Source: Podarcis muralis
Taxonomy: Eukaryota
Assembly (NCBI RefSeq): GCF_964188315.1
Contig: NC_135669.1
Location: 16,926,001 to 16,990,000 of the forward strand
DNA: 64,000 nt
Direction of reading: 5' to 3'
Within the stretch, counting starts at the first letter, position 1, and each line of letters begins with the position of its first letter. This document shows, one piece after another, positions 47,995-64,000 of this stretch. Below the pieces are notes generated by a model, which saw only the letters and a list, made by a program, of their open reading frames with translations, was not told the DNA's origin and ran no database searches. The translations under genes were made by a program, and so were the position numbers.

Positions 47995-50900
47995 ATGGCG
48001 GCGGCCTCGGCTTCAGCCTCGGGCCTGTCCAAGGCCGAATACCTGCGGCGGCGCTACCTGGAGGCTGACGGGCCGGAGGCGGACTCGGAGGCCAAGAAGC
48101 GGCGCAAGAAGAAGAAGGCGGCGAAGGAGCTGCCGCCGGGAAGGTAGGAGACGGAGGGAGGGAGGGAACAAGGATGGAGGGATGGAGGGCCGGGGGTGGT
48201 TGTTGGCTCTGTCGCCGCGGCCTCCTCCTCCTTCTTGCCGATGGCGAGGAGACCCTCCTCCCTTTCCCCGCTCTCCTTTCCCCCTCCTTTTGAGGGGTGT
48301 GAACGCATAGAAATATCTGCGCTTCAAATCCCCTCGCACGGCCTCTCAGCCTCGCCTACCTCGCAGGGTTGTTGTGGGCGGGGGTGTTAAGTGAGAATGG
48401 AAGGGAGAACCATGTGTGCCACCATTGAGCTTCTTGGGGGGCCAAAAGAAAGGGATATAAAAGAATAAATGACGGTCGAATGCCAAAGTTCATCGCAGGG
48501 CAGCCTTGGTTGGTCAGACTGCCCGCCCTGCTTCTCAAGCCACAACGCCCATTTCTGTTTTTAATAGCCTTGCAGATATGCCCAAATATACTGGTCTGCA
48601 GCATTTTTTACTTGCTTGTTGATACGCAGCAGAGGAGGGATGGAGCATTGCACGGCTGGGTGGGGTGGAGGAGACCCTTGTCTAGCAGCCTACTTGCATT
48701 TCATGCTGGGTTTATGTCGTACCTGTGAAATTCCTCCTTCTATACGACAAAGGTGAACAAGTCCAATTATCTCTTTCCCACCCGACAGAGCGTTCCAGGC
48801 AGCCCACTTGCTCACATCATCTGTGTGGCATTTCATGACCTTGTCTATGCAATTTCTGGTTTCCTATTCCTACCAGATTAGTGCTGGAATGTGAGTCTTT
48901 TTATGCCTCCACCAATCTTCCATTTACCCTCTTTCTCTCCAGCTGTGTAACCAAGCCTCAGTATCATTCAGTAGCATTGGCTGTCATTCATTCTATTCCC
49001 CCCGTCTTTTCTAGGAGTTTACTATAGCTTTCAGATTGTAAGGTCCTAGAAGGCAGCAGTTTGTGGTCTTTGTATGAGTATCCTGCGAAATGGCAGGTAT
49101 GTTGATGGTGCTGCCCATAGAAGCCTTTAGCATGCCACTCAGCTCTTAAAGCAGTGGACACAACATAATAAGAAAAATGAGGGCGCAGCCCACTTGTACA
49201 TTCTGAGTTTCTAACAGACTAGTCAGAATGTTGGGCTTGGATGTGGAAAACCTAATACTTAGGTAAAGGTAAAGGGACCCCTGACCGTTAGGTCCAGTCG
49301 CAGATGACTCTGGGGTTGCAGCACTCATCTTGCTTTACTGGCCAAGGGAGCCGGCGAACAGCTTCCGGGTCATGTGGCCAGCATGACTAAGCTGCTTCTG
49401 GCAAAGCAGAGCAGCTCATGGAAATGCCGTTTACCTTCCTGCCGGTGCGATACCTATTTATCTGCTTGCACTTTGATGTGCTTTCAAACTGCTAGGTTGG
49501 CAGGAGCAGGGACCGAGCAATGGGAGCTCACCCCGTCGCGGGGATTTGAACCACCGACCTTCTGATCGGCAAGCCCTAGGCTCTGTGGTTTAGACCACAG
49601 CGTCACCCACGTCCCTCAATAACTAGGTAGATATATGCAATTGTTCTCCCCTTATGGTACCTTGGAGCCTTTTCCTGTTCAGACCCACATTTGGTTAATC
49701 TGTCTGGGGCATGGCATCTTTCCCTCTCTACCACCTACATGAAATTAGGCAGAGTGCACCAGTTGCCCACCTTTGCTCTAAGGCAGAGCTTTCCAAACTG
49801 TGTCACAATATGTTAGTGTGTTGGCTGCAGTGTGTAGGTGTGTTGCACAAACACTTCCTGTGCTCCTCCTGGGGTTGGAAAGGGGCTTGTTTAACCTCCA
49901 GTTTGCTGGTAAAACAATTCCTGTGTCACCAAATGATGCATGTCTAAAAAGTATGTCACCAACATGAAAAATTTGGAAAGTTCTGCTGTAGGGGCTAAGG
50001 TTGCCCCATTGAATACATGCATGAAATTGGGCTGTAACGGGCTCATCATGGCAGCAAGATGATAAGCAAAACTATATTCTAACAGCCTAGCAGTTATCTA
50101 GAAGATTTATTCATGAAGTGTTTGTAATGCTACACTGTGATACTAATGCGATTTCTTCTTCTAGAGAGCTGCTCTTCCCCCCCCCCCCCCAGAGAATACA
50201 TTTAAACAATATGCTGATCTTTGATCATGTTGTGTTATCTGTTTGACATCCAGAATTCGCATAGTGGATGATGATGACACGAGCTGGAAAAATGTCCCTA
50301 TTGAGCAGGAAAAAGAGGATGAGGAGGGGGATGATGGAGACTTGCCTGTGGTGAGTATTTGGAGGCAGTTGGAAACAGAGAGCTTAGCTGTACCATCACT
50401 TATTTAAAACTGTTTAACTCTCTGAGTAAGTACATCACCTTTTCTTCTCAGTCGTGTGTAGTGAAGATCAATATAATTTCCATTTTACTCATTGAAATTG
50501 GAGGGTTCAGACAAGCACAGATGCATTGAGTGCACACTGTAAAAAGGGTCGCTCAGCTGGGGAGATTTTGGCTTTGCAGTGCGACATGCCTCTTGGGATT
50601 GCCCAGATCTCCTGTCTTTCCTTCCAGGTGGCTGAGTTTATTGATGAGCGGCCAGATGAAGTTAAATGGATGGAAGAATTCCGAACCAGTAACAAGTGGA
50701 AGCTGTTGGGAGGTTAGTGTCCTGTAGTTCTTCTAATGGGGTGATTATTTTGTGCTCTGTGAGATACTTTCATCAGGTTAGCGCTGCATGTAGGCACACA
50801 GCCAAGATGGGCACAAATTTTTTTTTTTTGGGGGGGGTGAGGGGGTTCTTTTGTGTAGTTTTGTCTCTCTTTCTGTAGTTGTGGCAGAAGAATGAGGTCA

Positions 50901-53900
50901 GGTGAACAGAGAAGTAGCTTAGTAAACGTTATGGAAGCGTAACCAAGAAATAGCGGTTACTACGCAAAAAAGAATGAAGATGGAAAATAAATACACTTTA
51001 CTTATTAGTGTATAGGCAATGTAGAGGTTCATTGGGGTCTTAACAAAATAAGACATTATGAGTCATAAGAATGCAAACTGTCAGTAATGGAATCTCATGT
51101 AGAATTCAGTTAGTGTGAACATTTTTGCTATGACGTATCACGTGTAATCCGTTTTTCATAACTATGCTACAGAAGTGGGTCAACAGTGACCCTTCAATGA
51201 CATCCCAACTCACATCATCCCCCAGCCAGCATAGTTAATGCTCAGGGATGGTGGGAGTTGTAGTCCAGCAGTATTTTCAGGGTGAAACAGTTTGTGGGAA
51301 GTGGAATTTGAAAAAGAAGTTTGTGGGTTGCCAAAAAAGCCTGTCAGGGGTTTACTTTAGCTCAGGGAGGGGGCGAGCATAGGAATGCAGGGAGTTGCCT
51401 TGTGCCAAGTCAGACTTTGATCCATCCAGCTCAGTGTTATAGATACTGACTAGCAGGAGTCTCTTCTCCCACCTTGAGACACCAGGTATTATCTCTAGGA
51501 TCTTTTGCATGGAAAAATATGTGCTCTCTTCCTGGACAGTGATGTGAATTTTCCAGGGGGGAAAAATGAATTGGGGTAATTTGCATTGGAAAACTTTCTA
51601 ATGCTCTAGAAGGTGATCTAATCTAGTGTGTTTATTTTACTTATATTTAATAAACAACACTTAGAAAGGTTGGCTCTGTCTGACTTGCCTAACACAGTAT
51701 TTTCAATTGATGTTAATTGTTACTAATTACCATATGAGATGGAATGCATTATGCAGAAAGATAAAGCACTGGAACATGTTCCGTTTCACATCACCACTCC
51801 TGGGTTAGTTTTCTAGACATTGCTGTCCTTTGCATGACCATTGCAAAAGCCACAAAACTTGCATCTTCTCATAATGTTATGGAGACGATTCAGAGGTCTA
51901 CATAAACATGGCTTGAATTGCGTTCTTTTTTCAGATCAAAAGAAAGAGTCAGAAGAATCTGATCCTTCTGTGACTGCAAAGTCAACAAAGAGGTAAGGAG
52001 GGTATTTAGTTAAGCATTTAACAGCTCATGTTTTCCTGATTAGGACACATCTGTGGTATAGGAGGAACAGATGGAAAGCTCTTTAACTTGAGTCGGCTGA
52101 AAGCAAAGAGTAAGGTTACCATAACTTCCGTCATAGTGCTTCAGTATGCTGATGTCAACGTAGTGTGCGCACACTCAGAGGATGATTTCCAAACCATCCT
52201 ACGTATTTTTGAAGAAGCTTACGAAAAGCTTGACCTATCGCTCAACATCCCAAAAACCAAAGTGCTGCACCAATAAGCACAAAACAACTTCTCTGCTACA
52301 AATCCAACTGAATGTTAAGACAGTATTGTTTACTCACTGTTAAGACAGTGTTCATGAAAGACAATCTTACTTGTCTACGAGGGATCACCAGAGGAGGAGG
52401 AGGAAGAAAAGCTCCTTCAGGATGATTTTAACAGCTGCTGTGACAGTGGCTTTAGCCTTCTGGACTGGAGCAGCTATTTAACATAGTTTGTGAGTGGAAG
52501 GAATGACTAGCACTTCATGTTTGTAGCACACCAGCTCTATGAAATCTTTGAAGCTAAGGCACAAAGCTTGTTGCAGGCTCATTGAAAACAGACTGTGTAG
52601 GCTCTGCACAGTTGAAAAGGGCACAGTAAGCCTCCCAACATCTTTATGAACATAGTTAGAACTGGGCTGGCCGTAGTGCGGTATAAGAGGGGTGTCAAGA
52701 TAAATAATTAATTGTCACATGATTCCAAAGAAAGAGCACACATGGTAGTCAGTTGGCATTCTGACTGTGGTGGTATTGGCAAAGAAACTGGCAGTGGCAG
52801 AGTTTCAAGTGCCAACACCAGGAGGCTGAGTCAGCCCACTGGGTGTTCTCTGGTCAGGATTGCTACTCCCCGCTTGCTGCCAGCCTGCTGTGTCAAAACC
52901 ATATAAGGCAGCAAAATTTTACTGAAAGTGACTTGCCTGTTTGAAGCTTTGACTAATGTGCATTTTGGTTTTCCTTCCAGTTCAGACGCCACAAAACAAA
53001 AAAGAGCAAGGCATTCGCCAGACCAGTCACCGCCGAGGAGACGTCATGACTCGCTGGACCAATCACCGCCCAGGAGGGTCCTCCGTGACTCGCCGGACCA
53101 GTCTCCGCCCAGGAGGACCCGTTGTGACTCACCAGATCAATCCCCACCCAGGAGGGGCCGTCGTGACTCACCAGATCCGTCCCCGCCCAGGAGGGGCCGC
53201 CGTGGCTCACCAGATCCATCACCTAAAAGGCATCATTCTGACACAGGCAAAAATAATACCAGAAGCTCGCATGGAGGCCGACAGGAACGCTATGCTGACA
53301 AGCCCTCAGCCCATCAAAGGTGGCAGGCTACCTCTGACCTTTCACCACCCCAGAAGAAGACGCGTGATTCTGATGCCGGCCCATTGCTGTCTCAGAAACG
53401 GCAGTTGCCCACTGGGGGTCTAGAAAAACAAAGCAACGCCAGAGGTGAGTAGATTTGTGGAAGCCTTTCTCCAGAGACAAGTATGTTTTGGGAGTGTGAG
53501 TTATTCTTATTGGAAGTCCTGGTAAACATCCAGTCACATTTGGTAATTTGTTTTGATGCTTGTATGCCACTTCGCAGACTCTGAAGCCAATAAACGGTCT
53601 CATTCATCAGCACCTTCACCGAGGAAGCGCCAGAGGCATGATTCTGAATCCGACTCCGATTCTCCCCCACCCAGGAGGAGTGCCAAAACCTCCTCAGATT
53701 CGGACCTTTCCCCACCACGGGCCTCTCGCAGTACACACTCACAGCGCCCGAGCTCTCCTTCCGACCTCTCTCCTCCCAGAAGAACACGGGGCAAGTCTTC
53801 AGACTCTGATTTGTCCCCTCCCCGCAGAGGTCAAGAAGGCAGGAGGAAGGCCCACAGATCCGAGAGCCCCCCTGACCTCTCACCACCTCGACGGGCCAAG

Positions 53901-56900
53901 GACACCAAAGGGAAGGATGGCATCCAAAAGGTGAGGACTTCGTTATTCAGCAGTAAATGTGCTGATTCTGTTTTGTAAGCGTGACAACCATGATAAGAAC
54001 TGTTGAAGAATTGGTGCCAGACTTTGCTTTTTCTTCTTCTCTCCCTGCCCCTTTTCTCTCTGTGTGTTGTGGTGTTTTTTTTAATAGATGGTAAATCTGC
54101 AGGCAGGGATGTCTTGTTTTAATTGATTATATCTAAACTACTCTGGGAGCCTTTTGGGCTGAAGAGCAGAGTACAAATGCTCTAAATAAATAAGTAAGGA
54201 CCCTGTAATGATTTCCTGTATGCTTTCCCCATGTGCTGTGGGGAATGACTTCCCTCAGAGGCAGCTACACTGGAATTATATGGGGTTTAGTACTTTTGTG
54301 GAACTGGCACAAGGGTAGCATTTTTTATTTTTGACACAGCTGTTGTGCTGCTTTTGGCTTGCAGGGCCCTCAGATGCTTTCGGGGGGCAAAGCTGGCTTA
54401 GTGTCAGCTGAGCTGCTGAGGAAGGAGCAGCATGAGCTCAGGAAACAGCAAAGCAGCAGCAAACATTTGGAAGGTGAGCTGTGGGGTGGGAGGCAGAGGT
54501 GGAGAATGTGACTTTCTCAGGGTCACACAGTGACTTCATGGCACAAGTAGGACATGAATCCAGCCCTCACCCCCGGGGTTGTATGGGCACCTCTGTTTAA
54601 AACCCATCAGGACATGTCATCCCCGCCAAGACTGGGTTACTATAGCAGGAATGAAAGCGGCTTTCAAAAGGAAGTGTTCGGCTGTGACTCTCCAAAGTGG
54701 AGCAGGGCCCACCAGAGTTTTGGGCAGGTCCTCCTGCAAATGCAGTGGTGATGAGCTGGGACTTCTAGTTGCAGGAATGGGTATTTGCAGCTTCTGCATT
54801 CTCTAAAGCGAACCACTCTCCTTTCATACGGATGTAGGGGGCTATGATTGAAAAATGTGCAAGCCTACAGATATTTGATGCTGGTGGTGCTGTGGGTTAA
54901 ACCACAGAGCCTAGGACTTGCTGATCAGAAGGTCGGCGGTTCGAATCGCTGCGACGGGGTGAGCTCCCATTGCTCAGTTCCTGCTCCTGCCAACCTAGCA
55001 GTTTGAAAGCACGTCAAAAGTGCAAGTAGATAAATAGGTACCGCTCCGGTGGGAAGGTAAATGGCGTTTCTGTGCGGCTTAGTCATGCTGGCCACATGAC
55101 CTGGAAGCTGTACGCCAGCTCCCTCAGCCAATAAAGCGAGATGAGCGCCGCAACCCCAGAGTCAGTCACGACTGGACCTAATGGTCAGGGGTCCCTTTAC
55201 CTTTTACAGATATTTGGAGTCTAATTGTTCACACCCAATGAAGTTAGCACCCAGCAGATTGAAAGGAAATGCAGATAGACCTTTCAGCCCCCTGTTGTGG
55301 CTAGCTTGAATGCCTGACTCCTTCTCCCCCGCTTCCCTTCCCCAGTTGAATCGCGACATGCTGAAACAGTTTTCCGGGACAAGTCGGGCCGCAAGAGGGA
55401 CCTGAAGCAGGAGTTGCTGGAACAACGCAAGAAAGCAGAGGAGAAATCCGAGCGAGATGAGCAGTATGCCAAATGGGGAAAGGGGTAAGCTGGATGGTTC
55501 CTGCGTTCAGGGCAGAATCCCTAATTTCCTATCAGACCACTGAAAAATGGGGATGGGAAAACTCACTTAACAGTGAGAAAGGAAGGTGTCCTAACACCAG
55601 CTCAGAAGATGGAACCTGACACCTCCTGCCTGCAAAGCAGGGGCTCTAGCATTGAGCCACAATCATCCCCCTCAGAGAAAAGCCGCTGTCTCAAGCCTTC
55701 CTCGGTGTGTTGCTGACTTGGGCAACAGCAGGTGACCCTTCTCTCTTTCCAAACCTCCTGTAGTGTCTTGTGCAAAAAAGGCAAGAAAAAAAGTTGAGTC
55801 CAGCCGCTTATGCCCTGCTTTGGTTTGTGCCTCTCCCTGCAGCCTCACACAGAGCCGGCAGCAGCAGCAGAATGTGGAAGATGCAGCGAAAGAAATGCAG
55901 AAGCCACTGGCCCGGTACATTGACGACCAGGACTTGGACAAGATGCTGCGGGAGCAGGAGCGTGAGGGGGACCCCATGGCCGAGTTCCTTAAGAAGAAGA
56001 AGGCCAAGGAGAAGAAAGATACCAAAGGTCAGCACTTGCGGTCTCCAGGTGTTACTGGTTTGTGGCGGTGGGGAGGGTGGCTGTGGTTGACAGGAAGAGG
56101 CACTCTGCTAATTCTCGTGCTTCCCAAAGGTCATTTCTGATCTGTTACAGCTAAGAGGTGGAATGTTCAGCTTGGAAATAACTTTGACCCTAAGAGATGC
56201 ACCTAAATGGAATTTTCAACAATGCCTTTTGAAAAGGGTGGGGTGTCAGGAGTCAGAGGAGTGACTAAAGCTTTGTGGTGAAGAGAACTGGGCAAGAAAC
56301 TGCCCCGTCGTCCTTCTCTGTTACACCCAGTCCTCACATTCTACTTCTAAGCTCCCCTCAACAAAAATTGCTTTCTGGGGTAGAGGGGGGGAAGATGTTG
56401 TTCAGGGCTTCTTCCTCTAGGAAGGCATTTTGTGATGGATGGCATATCAGGCATTCTGCTTTTTTGCCTTGCCTCTGCCTTCCCGTGAACAACCCTGTGC
56501 CTTGCACATTGTCTTCCCCGTAAATCACACTGTCTTTGAGGACCACTGTTGACTTCCTCTATGTGTGTTGGGTCAGTGCTAGCATAACTCCCTGGCTTCA
56601 CTGAAAAATAATAATGGTTGAAGCTGTTTGCTTATTTTCCTTCCCCTTCTTCAGAAAAGCCAAGATACAATGGACCAGCACCCCCACTTAATAGGTTCAA
56701 CATCTGGCCTGGGTATCGCTGGGATGGAGTAGACAGGTAAGTCTGTCTTTCTGCTAGTAATGGTAATAGATGGTCTCCAGTTACAAAGAACCATGTGATA
56801 TACCCATGTGGCATTTCCTACTTGCAATATTGACTTATTGCTGAAACAACTTCTGGTTTCGCGTCCATCCTCTGTCCCTGATCAGGACACTGAAGCAGCA

Positions 56901-57201
56901 TCCCTAATGGGGTTTCTTTGTGAAGTTTGCGGGTAGGTGGGTTATCTTCATTCAGCTGCTGTTGGCAACTTTCTCATGACCAAGATTTGGGGCTGGGAAA
57001 TTTGAAGGACTTGGTTGCACCGTGAAGGCCACCCAGCTCCCCCAAGAAATCTGTCTGCCCCAGTTTTTTGTTGGGTCACCTTATTGACTTTGTTTCTGTT
57101 CCTGTAGGTCCAACGGCTTTGAGCAGAAGCGGTTTGCCAGGATCTCAAGTAAAAAGGCAGTTCAGGAGCTGGCATACAAGTGGAGTGTTGAGGACATGTG
57201 A
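47995..57201 (+). CDS. BUD13: BUD13 homolog (RES complex), 604 aa; join(47995..48143,50254..50350,50628..50712,51935..51992,52981..53444,53578..53930,54365..54473,55346..55484,55843..56027,56655..56736,57108..57201)
   Basis: [44 protein letters not shown] repeats, [57 protein letters not shown]. The exons total 1815 nt in frame, and a YY1 motif AAGATGGCGGC overlaps the ATG. Confidence 0.95.
49262..49615 (-). mobile_element. Sauria SINE in BUD13 intron 1
   Basis: Full-length copy. Confidence 0.88.
52063..52276 (+). mobile_element. RTE-clade LINE reverse transcriptase fragment
   Basis: [16 protein letters not shown]...[21 protein letters not shown]...[13 protein letters not shown], a degenerate YADD region. 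Confidence 0.8.
54878..55203 (+). mobile_element. Sauria SINE, TSD TACAGATATTTG
   Basis: 12-bp TSD and ACCTTT tail. Confidence 0.88.
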
Positions 57202-57863
57202 TTTTCCATCCTGAGATGGAACCTCCTCACAGTGCTGGAGATGGAAGGATCTCCTCTGTAACAGGGTTAAAGGGGTCCACCTATCAAGACTATTCCAGGT
57301 GGTTTTGGAAGGGCTTCGAGGCAGCTTGCTGTTTCCAGGCAGAAGGCGAGACTGATGGAATTCCTGCAGTATATATAGACTGGACAAGGAGGAGTGAGAG
57401 AGAGCCACCTATGGTGCAGAAGCCCAAAGTCCTTTTCGGATGGAAACCTCTGGAAATCCACTGCTGGAAGAAACTGGTCTCTTCCATATTAACCTCATGG
57501 AGCAGTTGAGGTTGCTGCAGCTGATCGTAAGCTGTATTTGAAATCTCAGGTGCTTTTTCTGGGTAAGGAGCAGCAAGAGACAAGGTTAAGGAGGACTCCC
57601 TTCATTGAATAACGTTCCTTCTGCTCCTTGGAAGGGTTTGACTGTGTTTTCTTGTAGCTGCTGGCCATGGTTGAAACCACTGGCTGGTTTGTGACTCTGA
57701 ACATCCTGGTGTACATAAGCACAACATCTTCCTGCGTTTTCTGTCTTGCACTGTTGGGTGCACACACTTCTGGACTGTGCAGTTTTTGCCTGGGCAGGGA
57801 GAATGCTTTCCCATAGCCTTTTCCTAAAAGGACCAGCTGGAAATCCGCACTCTTGTATTTGAG

Positions 57864-57869
57864 AATAAA
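57864..57869 (+). terminator. Candidate BUD13 poly(A) signal
   Basis: First AATAAA after the BUD13 stop. Confidence 0.5.
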
Positions 57870-58203
57870 CTCACCTCCAACAGCAGCTCAAGGAGCTAGT
57901 TGGGAAGTCAACGTGCAGATTTTGAAACCCTTTTACATTTCCCCTGAAGCATCTGCTGGTGTCACCGAAGGGGTCTCCTGCAAAACATAGGGAAGCTAAA
58001 TGCAAAGACTTTTTCATAGGAAATGGGATTCTCTGCAGCTAATTTTTTTACAACCCTTTGTATTTTTGATGTACAGTTTGTAAATAACAACTTCCTTTTC
58101 CGATTTGGTTGTATGCATTTTGTAAAGTTCTGTTACCACCATGTTTATACCAGGGAACAAGAAAGATTTGGGCTTGAGCTGTTTCGAGTTTATATTACTC
58201 CTT

Positions 58204-58209
58204 TTTATT
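58204..58209 (-). terminator. Poly(A) signal of the SAXO-like gene
   Basis: TTTATT on the + strand, about 160 nt past the TAA at 58370. Confidence 0.55.
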
Positions 58210-58369
58210 GAACACAAGTGTGTTTTTGCTATGGCAATATCCAAACATGAACAGAACTTGAGAGTACAATTTTATAATTTGCGAAGGAGCATAGATTCCA
58301 GCCCCCTTTAAAATCCACGATGTTCAGCCATTAGTCCCTGAGGTCTGACCCTTCTGGCACAGTCACACT

Positions 58370-61300
58370 TTAGTCGTCTGCTTCTTTCCTAGACTTCTGT
58401 TGCTGGGCTAGGTACATTTGCAGTCGACAGACAGGGAGTGGAATATGCCTGCAAAAGAGAATGCAGAGCTTGCTTAAGCTGCTGCTGTTGCAATCTCTAC
58501 CCTGCAACAGCCCAGCCAAACTTTTGGATGCCTCCCTGGGGCTTTTCTTGGCCACTATTTGGCTGGATACCTGTAAGCCTCTCGGTGGATGGTGGCAAAA
58601 TCTTGCCCTCCCTCAGTCTGGATGGGTTTCAGTTCTGGCTTGTAGCTCTTGGCCTTCTCCGCTCTCTTCAGCAGATAAGTGCTGCATGTTGTGGTTTGGC
58701 TTCCAAAATGGCCCTTTTGAAACAAAACAGAAACAAGCAGCAGATGCTTTCAGTGTCCGTTGGCAGAGATGGGATACAGTATTAAAATGTCCTTTGTCTG
58801 ACACCTTAAGCCACAGCCATGAGCGGAGCTGACAAAGGGCTTCCTGTGAGAGAGCAGCCCAATCCACCACGTTCACATCCGCTTCATATATGCTTGCAGA
58901 AGAGGTAGTTTAACTAGAAACGGGAAGGACTGAGAGTGGAGTAGATCGTTGAGGAAATTTGAAAATGATGCTAGGCAGTGTGCGTGCATCTTGTCCACTC
59001 TTCCTAATGAAGAGCTGATCCAGTTTCAACTCCTGCTTCCTTGGGCTTGAACAACAGGTGCATTTCCCTTTGGAAATCTGCGGTGCCCTGAGAGATTGGG
59101 AACAGGCATTTTTGGGGGTGGGGAGCTGCTTTTTTCACCTCGATTCAGCTACTGAGGAAGATTGGGGTTTGCTATTGATGCCTTTAGGCTCTTGCTTGCA
59201 ACACGTCCCTTTTTGGTGATTCTACTTCACAGAAGCTATACATTAGGGGCAAGTTTTTCTTCCCAGACCCATGAAGAGGACAGCCTTCCCACCACTCTTT
59301 CTAACGTCCTTGCTGCAAATCAAGCCACTTCTCTGTCTAACCTAGTCTTGTCTGCTGTGACTGACAGGGCTGAGGCAGGATGCATCCCTCTCATCACCTT
59401 TAGACCGGAAATGCCAGAGACTGGACCTGGAGCCTTATAAGTATTCGAGGATGTGACTAGGCAGGATTCCAGGGTGCAGTGATGGCTTGGCCCCCGAGCT
59501 ACGGCTCTGCCCCAAAGCACACTCTGCTCAATGGGTCCCTTACCAAGGGGTGGGTGCAGCTTCCTTCCCGAGGGTCTCCATATCGAATACGAGGCTGAGC
59601 TCCCCAGTCCCTGAAGAAGAACCTGTGTGCTGTGGAGTTGTCAAACTGGGCAGCCAGAGATTTCAGGGCTGTGCCTGGATGTTTAGTAGGCTCCGCATGG
59701 TTGAGGAGGACAGGAAGGTGATAAGGAAGCTGCAAGAGGAGAGGAATGCAAAAAAGATACAGGTAAAGGTAAAGGAGGGATGCGGGTAACGCTGTGGGTT
59801 AAACCACAGAGCCTAGGACTTGCCGATCACAAGGTCGGTGGTTCGAATCCCCGCGACAGGGTGAGCTCCCGTTGCTTGGTCTCTGCTCCTGCCAACCTAG
59901 CAGTTCGAAAGCAAAGTGTAAGTAGATAAATAGGTACCGCTCCAGCGGAAAGATAAACGGTGTTTCCGTGCGCTGCTCTGGTTCGCCAGAAGTGGCTTAG
60001 TCATGTTGGCCACATGACCCGGAAGCTGTACGCCGGCTCCCTTGGCCAATAAAGCGAGATGAGCGCCGCAACCCCAGAGTCGGTCACAACTGGACCTAAT
60101 GGTCAGGGGTCCCTTTACCTTTACCTTAAAGGTAAAGGATCTCTGGACAGTTAAGTCCAGTCAAAGGTGACTGTGGGGTGCAGTGCTCATCTCGCTTCAG
60201 GCTGAGGGAACTGGTGTTTGTCCACAGACAGCTTTCTGGGTCATGTGGCCAGCATGACTAAACTGCTTCTGGCACAACCGAACATTATGACAGAAACCAG
60301 AGTGCACGGAAACACCGTTTACCTTCCTGCCACAGCAGTACCTATTTATCTACTTGCACTGGCATGCTTCCGAACTGCTAGGTTGGCAGAAGCTGGGACA
60401 GAGCAACGAGACCTCACCACCGTCACAGGGATTGGAACCACCAACCTGATTGGCAAGCCCAAGAGGCTCAGTGGTTTAGACCACAGCGCCATCCGCATCC
60501 CTTCAGAAAGTAGCTGCAGATGTAGGTGAAGGAGGCAGGGAAGGGAATTATCTGCTTGCCCAGCTAGCTGACCCACGTTAGAGGTGGAACACTGGGTTGG
60601 GATGTGACTAGGCTTCATTCCAGTAGAGCCAAGGGAGCAATGAGGACTTGAAGCTACCCTATAAGTGAAGCCTGAAGGTCTTGGGCATGATGCCAATAGG
60701 AAGTGGGACCCTCATATTTTGCAATTCAATGGGCTCCACTGTTTCCCTCCCTAAGCCTTAGGGGCGAGGGGAGATAAATTTCAAGCAGGAAAGTACTACC
60801 CTCATTCTCTTACCAACTTCCTTTGCTGCTGGGGTGAACCCTTACCTTGGTAACGTTGTCTCCTTCAAATTTCCCAGCTTCCTCTGCCCCCCGGTTCTTT
60901 TTCAGCGTGATGAGCTTGGCACGAGAGTATGCAGAGGCGTTCCATCTACGGTAGCTCTCTCTGTGTACAGTCTGGAAGTTGGTTCTGTGCAGAAGTGATG
61001 GCGTGTGAGAATCTGCAGCGAATAGTCCCATTGTTAAGTCTCGGGTTACCGAAAGGCCTTTAAGCCAGTTGCACCACGCAGCAATATTTGTTCTCTCATT
61101 GTGAAGGAATAGTGATTCATTTGATCCTCTTGGGAACTGCTTTTAGAGTCTCAAAAGAGCCTGGTCTTACCTCGCTGACCTTTTCATGGTTGGCCAACGA
61201 AAATTGCCCTGGGTACACCTGTGCTAATGTAACAATACCCAAGAAGAAGATGCTGCACTTTCTCATGGGCAGAGGGGTCCTGGGAGAGGATGAAAGGGAA

Positions 61301-62755
61301 CCTTTCTTGGGACTTTAAACCGCTTGCCAAAGAAGAGTCAGTCCTGCGGCACCTTAAAGGCTAACAAATTCATTGATTTATGGCATAACTTTCCATGGAC
61401 CAAAACACATGTCATCAGATGCATGAAGTGATATCTCAGTTGACTGGTGTAGATGCAGGAGGAGAAAAATGCAAGGTGGGAGTTGAACAGTCATGAGATG
61501 CAAAAAGTACCATCAGTGATCATTCAATTAGAGCTTAGAGGGTATGTTAAACAGGCACAGGAACCCTTGACACAGCAAATTGGTGATCATTTACTCAGCA
61601 CTGCAAAGATAATTATGTTAACACCTATATTTGGGCAGGAAACCATGGTCTCTATTCAGACTCAGATGAACGTTTTTGAACTTACAGTGGTACCTCGCAA
61701 GACGAATGCCTCGCAAGACGGAAAACTCGCAAGACGAAAGGGTTTTTGGTTTTTTGAGCTGCTTCGCAAGACGATTTTCCCTATGGGCTTGCTTCGCAAG
61801 ACGGAAACGTCTTGCAAGTTTGTTTCCTTTTTCTTAAAACCATTAATACAGTTGCGACTTCACTTCGAGGAGCAACTCATAGCACGTGGTGTGGTAGCCT
61901 TTTTTGAGGTTTTTGAAGACTTTGGTGATTTTTGAAGCTTTTCCAAAACTTTTCTGAAACTGTGCTTCGCAAGACGAAAGAATCGCAAGACGAAAAAACT
62001 CGCGGAACGAATTAATTTCGTCTTGCGAGGCACCACTGTACTGATGAGTGAATCCAGCGGATTCACACTGAAGTTCCTTTCTCTGAGGATGGCCCTTTGC
62101 CTCCCCAAGATCAACAGCAAAGTGGTCTGGTAGGTCGAAATGTTCTCCTTTCTGAAATCCTATTTCTGTGCATTTATTCTTTCCCATTGGTGCTGGCGCA
62201 TTTGCCCAATGTAGAAAATCTTACGCCATGATCAATGGCTTTGTCTTTAAGGTGCCGTTGGCCTCTTCCTGGTTTTGTTTTGTTTTGACGGTATCAGACT
62301 AACAGGTGAAGTCCCTGCTCCTGTCTCTCCTCAGTCCCAAACCTCTCCAGAATCGTTCCCCAGCACCTGAGATGCTCACCTGAAAGCTGGGTTGATTGCC
62401 AGGTTGTCCAGAGGAGGCAGGGCAGGTGCAGCCTGGCCAAGAAAGGCCCTTTGTTCTGGGAAATCGCTTTGGTACTTGGTCACATATTCAGCTGCTGCTG
62501 GTTCTGAGGATTTTGTGATGGCCCTCTTCTCTCCAAGAAATGCCCCCTTCTCCAAGGGCAAGGGGTGGCTGGGGGTGGTGACGACATTTACTCCTGCAGA
62601 GCAGAAAATGGTGAATGATACCCTTTTATTTTGGTGTGAAGAGTTCTGATCCTCAGCCTTGTAACTCCCCCTGTATGGAAGGCTGCTTTTAATCCTAGGG
62701 AAAACTCACCTGGACTGTGTTCAGGTGGGGGCAGATACGGGAAGAGATGAAACAT
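58370..62755 (-). CDS. SAXO/FAM154-like axonemal microtubule-binding protein, ~268 aa; complement(join(58370..58448,58571..58713,59544..59729,60846..60984,62380..62593,62710..62755))
   Basis: Six GT-AG exons join in frame (807 nt). Repeated 11-residue Mn-like motifs occur every ~35-38 aa: AEYVTKYQSDF, TNFQTVHRESY, FEGDNVTKLPY, FDNSTAHRFFF, FGSQTTTCSTY, QDFATIHREAY. The start codon and the exon-4 acceptor are less certain. Confidence 0.78.
59777..60126 (+). mobile_element. Young Sauria SINE inserted in the tail of an older, opposite-strand Sauria SINE
   Basis: TSD TAAAGGTAAAGGA at 59764-59776 and 60127-60139. Confidence 0.9.
60127..60501 (-). mobile_element. Older Sauria SINE (tail continues at 59761-59776)
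   Basis: Core CCTATTTATCTACTTGCAC and head ending GCATCCC. Confidence 0.88.
61685..62038. mobile_element. Tc1/mariner MITE, family 3
   Basis: TIRs CAGTGGTACCTCGCAAGACG / CGTCTTGCGAGGCACCACTG with TA TSD. Confidence 0.9.
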
Positions 62756-63977
62756 TTTAGTTCAAAGACCTGACGCAGCCTCCAACTTAGAAATGCAACC
62801 AGGCCTCCCATTCCTGCCCCAGCTTAGCTCTGATTTGGTAGAACCAATACTATATTTGAGGTTAGTTGAATGTCCCCTTATCAAGCTTAGTTTTGGTGCT
62901 GCTGCTTTCTTCATTTTTAGCTTTACCTGGCTGGTCTGGAAGCTGCCTCTTTAATCCCTTGCTTCCGGAGCTGTTCTTGACTGCAGAGCTGCAGGGCTGG
63001 AGCTTGCTTGGAGGTTGCGAGAGGGCAGATGCCCGTGGTGGGAAGGGGAGCCGGCAGAGAGCCTGGCTCTGGAAGGGTCCCTGTGGGTGCTGGCCTCTCC
63101 TCTCCTGCAAAGCAGATGGCCCCACAACCCGCTCAGTAAATCTCACCTGCACGCCTCTCACTTTCCACCTGTGTGTTCATAAAACTGTCAAGTGCTGTGA
63201 TGACGTTATGTTTAGGAGCAGGGGGCTTTATCAAATGTACAAGCAAACCTGAGCCAAGGTTTGGCCCATGCAGGGTACTGCATAGAGATGAAACTTTGTT
63301 TCCTTCCGATTTCTTTAACAGAAATAATTCCAACCAAAAGCTCCCCTTTCTTCCCTTCAAGGTGTTTGAAGCTGTTTCCCCCTGAGATGTGCTAAAAGCA
63401 AGAGGGCAAATTAAGTAGGTATTTGCGTGCAGAACTGGGAGCTCCCCCTCACCCCAGGTGACAGGAGACCCCCCCCCCTTGTCTTTACCTTCGTGGGATG
63501 CTTGGTTCTCTTGCCTGGATCCCAGACGACAAACTCTGCCCTCTGGGTGGTCTGGAGGTCCATGGGAGGAGGATTTGGGTGTGGAGGGGTGCAGGGGGGC
63601 CTCTTGCTGCTGCGCGGGTGCACAGCTGTTTGGAGCAGGGGGGAAAGAACAGCAGTTAAGTGCTGGGATATGGTTGAGATCAGGGAAACGAAGGCACTGA
63701 CCCAGCCTTTTCCCAGGCCAGCTGGGCCCCCCTTCCCCTCTTACCAGGTGGGCAAGTGTAAGTTGCCTTGTAGTGAGAGAGCCAGCCCTTCCCAGTCTTC
63801 GGCTGCGCCAGCAGCACCCGTTGCTTCCGGCAGTTCCTGTGGCGCTTGTGGCGGCTGCATGGGAAGCAAGCAAGCATCTGAGAACTAGGTGGCATCAAGG
63901 GGGCTTGTCTCTCTGGCAACAGCTCTGTGTGCCAAGGAAAAAAGGGATACTTTTTTTGTTATTTGTACATATACAGC

Positions 63978-64000
63978 GGGATGTGGGTGGCGCTGTGGGT
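63978..64000 (+). mobile_element. 5' end of another Sauria SINE (cut by window edge)
   Basis: GGGATGTGGGTGGCGCTGTGGGT matches the heads of the other copies. Confidence 0.7.

What the first reader, a model, noticed from the sequence alone, without database searches (positions are those of the whole stretch)
58370..62755. Cryptic SAXO/FAM154-like gene next to BUD13, where the human region has no protein-coding gene
Seen: six exons, only partly visible in the ORF track, splice into MFHLFPYLPPPEHSPGVNVV...AEYVTKYQSDFPEQ...NLAINPAFRTNFQTVHRESYRRW...AGKFEGDNVTKLPY...AQFDNSTAHRFFFRDW...PLGHFGSQTTTCSTY...AKSYKPE...QDFATIHREAYRHIPLPVCRLQMYLAQQQKSRKEADD*. Phases agree at all five junctions and a poly(A) signal follows. 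Established: SAXO1/2 carry Mn motifs (F-x3-T/S-x5-F/Y, often after GK) about every 35 aa and bind the axonemal microtubule lumen; in human, BUD13 is followed by a long stretch without protein-coding genes toward CADM1. Inference: this is a short, six-repeat SAXO paralogue retained in reptiles and lost or moved in mammals, a candidate sperm or cilium microtubule inner protein. Possible upstream exons (donors at 62927 and ~63146) are unresolved.
Basis: partly seen in the sequence, partly recalled or inferred. Interest (0 to 1): 0.76.

Follow-up and report, generated by a model that had tools for sequence, protein, structure and literature searches.

The report
Divergent SAXO-family gene beside BUD13

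Summary
The six-exon chain is in the sequence as described: GT-AG at every junction and 268 open codons.

- **RNA support.** An assembled RNA contig confirms only exons 2-6. It joins exon 2 to an exon at 63104-62927, then 63625-63489, then one ending at 63745. Raw reads of a second study support two of these junctions.
- **Identity.** The eight in-window exons match RefSeq XP_028563928.2 at 390 of 390 residues. That is Podarcis muralis LOC114585438, 411 aa, "uncharacterized". The gene is therefore not cryptic. Its first coding exon, which holds the cysteine cluster, lies beyond the window.
- **Family.** The protein is a remote but full-length collinear SAXO homologue (profile-profile probability 100%, E 3e-39). 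It scores below Pfam's SAXO1-2 cut-off (14.8 against 26.5 bits).
- **Lineage.** A maximum-likelihood tree separates its clade, which runs from cnidarians to reptiles, from classical SAXO1/2 with 100/100 support. Several species carry both types. It is therefore not the orthologue of SAXO1 or SAXO2.
- **Position.** It lies tail-to-tail with BUD13 in lizard, turtle, alligator and gar.
- **Absence.** No bird or mammal protein was among the 81 relatives found.
- **Function.** A microtubule inner protein role is inferred, not shown.

The parts
63745..63854 (-). Coding exon 2 of 9 (110 nt). It holds the end of the Cys-rich N-terminal motif (RHKRHRNC) and the first Mn-like unit (SHYKATY). The acceptor is cag|C at 63855/63854.
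   Evidence: The donor at 63745 is joined to 63625 in the X2 contig. The translation is identical to P0202 residues 18-53. It is conserved in turtle, axolotl and gar.
63489..63625 (-). Coding exon 3 (137 nt). It holds the PRSSKRP..PNPPPM stretch and the second Mn-like unit (TTQRAEF).
   Evidence: Both junctions are in the X2 contig. It is 45/45 identical to P0202 and is the best conserved N-terminal block across the clade.
62927..63104 (-). Coding exon 4 (178 nt), a proline- and serine-rich linker with decayed Mn units.
   Evidence: Both junctions are in the X2 contig. The joint 62926/62592 also appears in 2 raw reads of X22. It is 59/59 identical to P0202.
62380..62593 (-). It holds the Mn-like unit TKYQSDF and the conserved PPLDNLAIN block.
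   Evidence: This exon alone retrieved the orthologues.
60846..60984 (-). It holds the Mn-like unit TVHRESY.
59544..59729 (-). It holds the Mn-like unit STAHRFFF and the conserved W-G-x-Q-P-R-I-R-x-G-D block. RefSeq isoform X3 skips it.
58571..58713 (-). It holds two Mn-like units (TTTCSTY, TIHREAY).
58182..58448 (-). Last exon. The coding part runs 58448-58373, with the conserved P-V-C-R-L-Q-x-Y-L tail and stop TAA at 58372-58370. The 3' UTR runs to about 58182.
58204..58209 (-). Poly(A) signal AATAAA, 22 nt before the end of the RNA contig.
62710..62755 (-). It is not part of the gene and lies in the intron between coding exons 4 and 5.
   Evidence: No joint to 62593 in any of four runs. It is absent from RefSeq isoforms X1 to X3 and gives no orthologue match.

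Best explanation
This is the 3' eight-ninths of Podarcis muralis gene LOC114585438. The gene has nine coding exons on the minus strand, convergent with BUD13, and is spliced and polyadenylated. It encodes a 411-residue, basic, proline-rich, largely unstructured protein.

The protein belongs to an old, separate branch of the SAXO (stabilizer of axonemal microtubules) superfamily. It has the SAXO-type N-terminal cysteine cluster (C-x-C-E-L-C-x-C-G-R-H), whose first part is encoded beyond the window. This is followed by [T/S]-x5-[Y/F] Mn-like units about 36 residues apart. It ends in a conserved Cys-containing helix.

Shown here: exon structure, transcription, protein identity, full-length collinear homology to SAXO1/2, separate clade, and conserved linkage to BUD13.

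Inferred, by analogy with SAXO1 in bovine sperm microtubules (PDB 8OU0), Toxoplasma SPM1 and Chlamydomonas FAP363: each Mn unit forms a short helix that docks on the luminal face of tubulin. The protein would then run along a protofilament inside axonemal or centriolar microtubules and stabilise them.

In lacertids the central part is decaying. One coding exon has been lost, several Mn cores are gone, and dN/dS is about 0.5.
For: - **Splicing.** One contig carries seven exact GT-AG intron removals, and raw junction reads come from a second study.
- **Identity.** 390 of 390 residues match XP_028563928.2.
- **Orthologues.** 81 were found from Nematostella to turtles, and all eight exons are conserved.
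- **Synteny.** The gene is tail-to-tail with a Bud13-domain gene in Chelonia, Alligator, gar and P. lilfordi.
- **Homology to classical SAXO.** hhalign of the clade profile against the classical SAXO profile gives probability 100%, E 3e-39, over 425 collinear columns.
- **Solved structures.** The sauropsid-only profile hits bovine SAXO1 8ou0_D at E 8e-6. A wider profile that also holds three classical SAXO sequences hits SPM1, a Chlamydomonas flagellar protein and STOP-family chains too.
- **Motif.** [TS]x5[YF] occurs 10 times against 3.6 expected, and 5 of 5000 shuffles reach that count. The stricter T-x-[HQY]-[RQ]-x-x-[YF] occurs 5 times against 0.05 expected.
- **Composition.** pI 9.85, 11.2% proline, 12 cysteines.
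- **Tree.** The split from classical SAXO has 100/100 support.
- **AlphaFold2.** There is no globular fold (mean pLDDT 51), only short helices over several Mn cores and a C-terminal helix.
- **Atlas.** The nearest clusters carry PF05217.
Against: - **Pfam threshold.** The lizard protein reaches 14.8 bits on Pfam SAXO1-2 (cut-off 26.5). Pairwise identity to lizard SAXO1 is 29% over 80 N-terminal residues only.
- **No solved member.** phmmer of single exons and of a turtle orthologue found nothing in the PDB.
- **Expression.** The tissue is unknown and the level is low, with 2 reads per junction in about 1.9 billion bases read of X22.
- **Weak constraint.** dN/dS against P. lilfordi is 0.52 (p = 0.04 against neutrality). 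Lacertids have lost an exon that holds the nearly invariant G-E-L-P..G-S motif. Function in this species could therefore be reduced.
- **No direct evidence.** There is nothing on localisation or microtubule binding.
Confidence: 0.85

Rival explanations
1. One reading: a short, 268-residue, six-repeat SAXO paralogue that starts at the ATG at 62755.
For: The ORF chain is open and all junctions are GT-AG with matching phases.
Against: No run joins 62710 to 62593. The RNA contig and raw reads join 62927 to 62593 instead. All three RefSeq isoforms start with the Cys-rich exon. The upstream exons are conserved to fishes, while the proposed exon 1 gives no match.
Confidence: 0.03
2. It is the lizard orthologue of mammalian SAXO1 or SAXO2, moved to another locus, as some NCBI names for its orthologues suggest.
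For: NCBI names orthologues 'stabilizer of axonemal microtubules 1' (Chelonia, Xenopus laevis, bichir, bowfin) or '2' (gar).
Against: Classical SAXO1 exists separately in a lizard (Pogona), a turtle, a bird and a rodent, and classical SAXO2 exists in gar, sharks and a caecilian. Both gene types occur together in gar, Geotrypetes, Lingula, Lineus, Tubulanus, Gigantopelta and Bulinus. The tree splits the two groups at 100/100, and SAXO1 plus SAXO2 form one vertebrate clade. Pfam scores are 470-765 bits for true SAXO1 against 15-32 bits for this clade. Linkage to BUD13 holds from gar to lizard.
Confidence: 0.03
3. In lacertids the gene is a transcribed relic on its way to becoming a pseudogene, and the protein no longer works as a microtubule inner protein.
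For: dN/dS is 0.52. One coding exon and several central Mn cores are lost relative to turtle, amphibian and gar orthologues. The Podarcis branch is long, 0.63 against 0.19 for turtle. No snake, gecko or Anolis protein is among the hits, and the Phrynosoma model is aberrant. An isoform skips the best conserved exon.
Against: The frame is intact and all splice sites are kept in P. muralis, P. raffonei and P. lilfordi. Replacements avoid the Mn cores and the terminal exons, and exon 9 is 100% identical. The mRNA is correctly spliced.
Confidence: 0.1

Closest known systems
SAXO1 (FAM154A); bovine sperm tubulin-SAXO1-SPACA9 structure, PDB 8OU0 chain D
   Same: Both have an N-terminal C-x-C-E-x-C-x-C-G-R-H cluster and a collinear array of Mn-like [TS]x5[YF] units. 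Both keep a conserved Cys in the last unit and are basic and proline-rich. Profile-profile probability is 100% over 425 columns.
   Different: - It sits in a separate clade at 100/100 support.
- Identity is only 29% over the first 80 residues.
- The Pfam score is below the cut-off.
- H-H-K-x-C-K-K follows the cluster in place of C-P-H.
- The tail is C-R-L-Q-x-Y-L plus a helix in place of C-P-A and G-H-x-F-Y.
- The locus differs, being linked to BUD13.
SAXO2 (FAM154B)
   Same: The same features as for SAXO1. SAXO1 and SAXO2 are vertebrate duplicates of the classical gene.
   Different: The same differences as for SAXO1. Gar, sharks and a caecilian carry both SAXO2 and this gene.
Its own orthologues: turtle 'SAXO1-like/SAXO2-like' LOCs, Xenopus laevis 'saxo1 isoform X1', and fish genes named after zebrafish si:dkeyp-69c1.9
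   Same: It is the same gene. Identity is 39-53%, the exons are the same, and so is the BUD13 neighbour.
   Different: The lacertid copy is about 65-75 residues shorter, with one exon lost and central Mn cores decayed. None of these genes has been characterised in the papers searched.
SAXO3, SAXO4 (PPP1R32) and SAXO5 (TEX45), sperm doublet microtubule inner proteins
   Same: They share the name and Mn-type motifs. SAXO5-like clusters are near neighbours by language-model features.
   Different: None of the three names appears among the chains matched in the PDB searches with this clade's profiles, although papers place SAXO3 and SAXO4 in solved sperm doublet structures (PMC11834534, PMC13066092). 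Saxo3 lies near Ntf4, Ruvbl2 and Gys1 in frog and newt (PMC13003380), not beside BUD13.
MAP6/STOP, Toxoplasma SPM1 (7MIZ), Chlamydomonas FAP363-type proteins
   Same: They carry Mn repeats that bind the microtubule lumen. A wider profile holding this clade plus three classical SAXO sequences matches SPM1 at E 5e-10.
   Different: The relationship is very distant and rests on the repeats only. MAP6 lacks the SAXO motif 1 (PMC3280300).

Membership tests
SAXO family as defined by Dacheux et al. 2012 (PMC3280300) | N-terminal cysteine cluster, motif 1 (C-V-C-E-L-C-T-C-G-K-H-K-C type) | tested here: met
   P0202 residues 9-25 carry C-L-C-E-L-C-D-C-G-R-H-K-R-H-R-N-C. The positions C, C, E, L, C, D, C, G, R, H are invariant or nearly so across 20 clade members and align to the classical C-I-C-E-I-C-x-C-G-R-H. 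Only the last part (RHKRHRNC) is encoded inside the window. The first part lies on an exon beyond 64000.
SAXO family as defined by Dacheux et al. 2012 (PMC3280300) | A linear array of Mn-like repeats with conserved T/S and F/Y six residues apart | tested here: met
   There are 10 [TS]x5[YF] sites against 3.6 expected. Cores lie at residues 43, 79, 197, 235, 309, 345 and 379, a period of about 36. The alignment to classical SAXO is collinear over 425 columns. The central units (residues about 96-190) are decayed in the lizard.
SAXO family as defined by Dacheux et al. 2012 (PMC3280300) | The last Mn-like unit carries a Cys-Pro motif | tested here: not met
   The Cys is kept in at least 90% of 20 clade members and aligns with the classical C of C-P-A. 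It is followed by R, K, Q or S, not P.
SAXO family as defined by Dacheux et al. 2012 (PMC3280300) | Proline-rich and basic | tested here: met
   P0202 has 11.2% proline and pI 9.85.
Pfam PF05217 SAXO1-2 | Score at or above the gathering cut-off of 26.5 bits | tested here: not met
   The lizard protein scores 14.8 bits, turtle 21.2, alligator 23.9 and Xenopus 25.0. Only the gar (27.2) and amphioxus (31.7) orthologues pass. True SAXO1/2 score 360-765 bits.
Orthologue of mammalian SAXO1 or SAXO2 | Nests with SAXO1 or SAXO2 in a tree, and no second classical copy occurs in the same taxa | tested here: not met
   The clade is separate at 100/100 support. Classical SAXO1 is present in Pogona and Pelodiscus, and both types occur in gar, Geotrypetes and several invertebrates.
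Microtubule inner proteins | Located in the lumen of axonemal or centriolar microtubules, and stabilises them against cold | not testable with these tools
   This is inferred only from homology to SAXO1 (8OU0) and SPM1 (7MIZ).

The most novel reading that the evidence does not exclude
The gene represents a third SAXO lineage that predates bilaterians and is linked to BUD13 since at least the bony-vertebrate ancestor. It would be kept from cnidarians to reptiles but lost independently in mammals and in birds. No paper has described it, and databases mislabel it as SAXO1, SAXO1-like or SAXO2-like. It would then be an uncharacterised microtubule inner protein of non-mammalian sperm or cilia. Its partial decay in lacertids would be a snapshot of how such a protein is lost.
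Probability: 0.55. Interest if true: 0.5.

Novelty: new member of a known kind. Interest (0 to 1): 0.4.

Why it matters
Work on microtubule inner proteins leans heavily on mammalian, sea urchin, Chlamydomonas and Tetrahymena structures. An old SAXO paralogue that mammals and birds lack would be missed by that work. It could explain unassigned luminal densities in amphibian, fish or reptile sperm.

It also shows that current database names for this gene mix two paralogous lineages.

Tried and rejected
- **Single exons by reference.** Pfam gave nothing. PDB phmmer gave nothing on the four exons tried. The word-index protein search with exon 5 gave nothing, as expected from its length filter. The Atlas search with exon 7 gave nothing useful. 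The exhaustive phmmer search with exon 5 then found the orthologues.
- **Joined model.** Full-length work used database proteins, above all P0202, which equals the spliced product over every in-window exon.
- **PDB with a turtle orthologue.** phmmer found nothing. Only profiles reached SAXO1.
- **SAXO3.** I considered it and rejected it because its genomic neighbourhood is different.
- **Literature.** The search for the zebrafish clone name found no paper.
- **AlphaFold2.** It gave a low-confidence, unfolded model, so no fold search was run.
- **Remnant of the lost exon.** tblastn found none in the intron 62926-62594.
- **Earlier scan notes.** They hold nothing on this gene.
Full report
**Observation.** I read the minus strand of 58250-63300 and located every boundary by script. 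Their coding coordinates are:
- 62755-62710
- 62593-62380
- 60984-60846
- 59729-59544
- 58713-58571
- 58448-58370

All introns are GT-AG and the phases match. The chain is 807 nt, which is 268 codons plus a TAA stop. A canonical AATAAA lies at 58209-58204.

**Transcript evidence.** One call of read laying on 57900-63800 used four runs of the same species.
Exon 2 (start 62593) is joined to an exon at 63104-62927, that one to 63625-63489, and that one to an exon ending at 63745.
- A further 274 contig bases lie upstream of that joint.
- The contig ends at 58182, 22 nt after the AATAAA.
- Raw RNA-seq reads of an independent study (X22) give two reads each for the joints 60984/62380 and 62592/62926.
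- No run shows a joint from 62710.

- Single exons gave nothing in Pfam, in the PDB sequences, in the word-index search or in the Atlas.
- The exhaustive phmmer search with the 70-residue exon 62591-62382 found four representatives. These are a Podarcis muralis protein at 96% identity, and Phrynosoma, Crocodylus and Gopherus proteins.
- The turtle cluster holds 29 proteins. They are named SAXO1-like, SAXO2-like or uncharacterized.

**Identity of the gene.**
- All eight in-window exon translations are identical, 390 of 390 residues, to P0202. That protein is XP_028563928.2, Podarcis muralis LOC114585438 isoform X1, 411 aa, 'uncharacterized protein'. The window is therefore P. muralis and the gene is already in RefSeq.
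- Isoform X2 has 408 aa. Isoform X3 has 349 aa and skips the in-frame exon 59729-59544.
- The protein starts with 17 residues (M-E-S-P-P-F-K-E-C-L-C-E-L-C-D-C-G) that are not in the window.
- In the P. lilfordi locus, which is 94-96% identical in DNA, that exon lies about 1.2 kb beyond the position matching window base 64000.
- Inside the window, coding exon 2 starts at 63854, after a cag acceptor.

**Family.** A profile of sauropsid members found 81 proteins at E values from 1e-287 to 1e-7.
- Present: turtles, crocodilians, lacertids, a salamander, caecilians, many frogs, lungfish, coelacanth, gar, bichir, bowfin, sturgeons, eels and other basal teleosts (named after zebrafish si:dkeyp-69c1.9), sharks and rays, amphioxus, a starfish, nemerteans, a brachiopod, molluscs, Nematostella and a rotifer.
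- Not present: any bird or mammal.
- Every window exon aligns to these proteins.
- tblastn of turtle, axolotl and gar proteins hits all eight exons.

**Relation to SAXO1/2.**
- A profile of three distant classical-type hits retrieved classical SAXO proteins. These include SAXO1 of Pogona, Pelodiscus, a pigeon and a hamster, and SAXO2 of gar, sharks and a caecilian. Classical genes also came from Lingula, Lineus, Tubulanus, Gigantopelta and Bulinus, which carry the window-type gene as well.
- A careful maximum-likelihood tree of 43 proteins splits the window-type clade (21 rows) from the classical clade (22 rows) at 100/100 support. Vertebrate SAXO1 plus SAXO2 form one clade (100/99) inside the classical group. 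The tree is unrooted.
- Both types coexist in protostomes and vertebrates, and Nematostella has a window-type gene. This places the duplication before bilaterians.
- Profile-profile comparison of the two clades gives probability 100%, E 3e-39, over 425 collinear columns, from the N-terminal cysteine cluster to the C-terminal cysteine.
- Pfam SAXO1-2 scores are 14.8 bits for the lizard protein and 21-32 bits for other clade members. True SAXO1/2 score 360-765 bits, and the cut-off is 26.5.
- BLASTP against Pogona SAXO1 gives 29% identity over 80 N-terminal residues.
- The sauropsid-only profile hits bovine sperm SAXO1 (8ou0_D) at E 8e-6.
- A wider profile that also holds three classical SAXO sequences hits Toxoplasma SPM1, a Chlamydomonas flagellar protein and STOP-family chains as well.
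- None of the names SAXO3, SAXO4 or SAXO5 appears among the chains matched by either profile. Papers place SAXO3 and SAXO4 in solved sperm doublets and Saxo3 near Ntf4, Ruvbl2 and Gys1.

**Synteny.** The gene is convergent with a Bud13-domain gene, 1-4 kb away, in Chelonia mydas, Alligator sinensis, Lepisosteus and P. lilfordi. In Xenopus laevis the convergent neighbour has no Pfam record. In the window, BUD13 starts at 47995 on the plus strand. Its RNA contig ends at 58177, five bases from the end of this gene's contig.

**Anatomy and likely mechanism.**
- P0202 is basic (pI 9.85), has 11.2% proline and carries 12 cysteines.
- It has 10 [TS]x5[YF] sites against 3.6 expected, and 5 of 5000 shuffles reach that count.
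- The cores lie at residues 43, 79, 197, 235, 309, 345 and 379, a period of about 36.
- The stricter T-x-[HQY]-[RQ]-x-x-[YF] occurs five times against 0.05 expected.
- This matches the Mn unit syntax of Andersen et al. 2024 (PMC10973386) and motif 2 of Dacheux et al. 2012 (PMC3280300). The N-terminus matches their motif 1.
- The Cys-Pro of the last unit is replaced by Cys-Arg.
- AlphaFold2 gives no fold (mean pLDDT 51). It shows only short helices over several Mn cores and a C-terminal helix, as expected for an extended luminal protein.
- By analogy with SAXO1 in 8OU0 and SPM1 in 7MIZ, I infer that the protein lines a protofilament inside axonemal or centriolar microtubules. This step is not shown.

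**State in lacertids.**
- Against P. lilfordi the eight exons show 26 replacement and 15 silent changes. dN/dS is 0.52, and a binomial test against neutrality gives p = 0.038.
- There are no frame breaks.
- Turtle residues about 149-225 have no counterpart in the window. This includes a whole exon (residues 170-214) and the nearly invariant G-E-L-P..G-S motif.
- The gene is thus intact and expressed, but reduced.

**Verdict.**
- The SAXO-like reading is right in kind.
- The gene model, its size and the word 'cryptic' are wrong.
- The gene is an annotated but uncharacterised member of an old SAXO side branch that has no annotated counterpart in birds or mammals.
- That absence rests on protein databases. 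It was not checked in genomes, and no human sequence was used.

Noticed in passing
window 47995-58177 (+): BUD13 lies on the plus strand, with its first coding exon at 47995. Its assembled mRNA contig ends at 58177, only five bases from the 3' end (58182) of the convergent SAXO-like transcript. The two 3' ends abut or may overlap.
   Followed up: partly
window 61686-62034: A repeat of about 350 bp in the intron is absent at the matching place in Podarcis lilfordi, so it is either a young insertion in P. muralis or a deletion in P. lilfordi. RNA depth over it is huge because copies elsewhere are transcribed.
   Followed up: partly
window 59777-60650: Two repeat copies lie in opposite orientation inside one intron. 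Reads and contigs show 'opposite strands' joints (60030/60239). Depth reaches 200,000 in contig runs and comes from other copies of the repeat.
   Followed up: no
window 59544-59729: RefSeq isoform X3 of P. muralis (P0001, 349 aa) skips this in-frame exon. The exon holds one of the best conserved blocks of the family (F-D-x-S-T-x-x-K-F-F-F-R-D-W-G-x-Q-P-R-I-R).
   Followed up: partly
window 62594-62926 (intron); L001 12063-12197: Turtles have an extra coding exon here (residues 170-214 of P0013) that lacertids lack. No remnant is detectable in the lizard intron.
   Followed up: yes
P0002 (Phrynosoma platyrhinos KAH0623366.1): The C-terminal half of this iguanian model does not match the family, so it is either misannotated or a decayed gene. 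No snake, gecko, Anolis or Pogona member appeared among the 81 hits.
   Followed up: no
and name columns: Orthologues of this one gene carry inconsistent public names. They include SAXO1, SAXO1-like, SAXO2, SAXO2-like, 'MAP kinase-activated protein kinase 3' (Platysternon) and 'proteoglycan 4-like' (Dendropsophus).
   Followed up: no
window 57975: The X2 individual carries an 8-base insertion (TCTTCTGT) in what is most likely the BUD13 3' UTR. X2 differs from the window at about 1% of exon positions, so it is another individual of the species.
   Followed up: no
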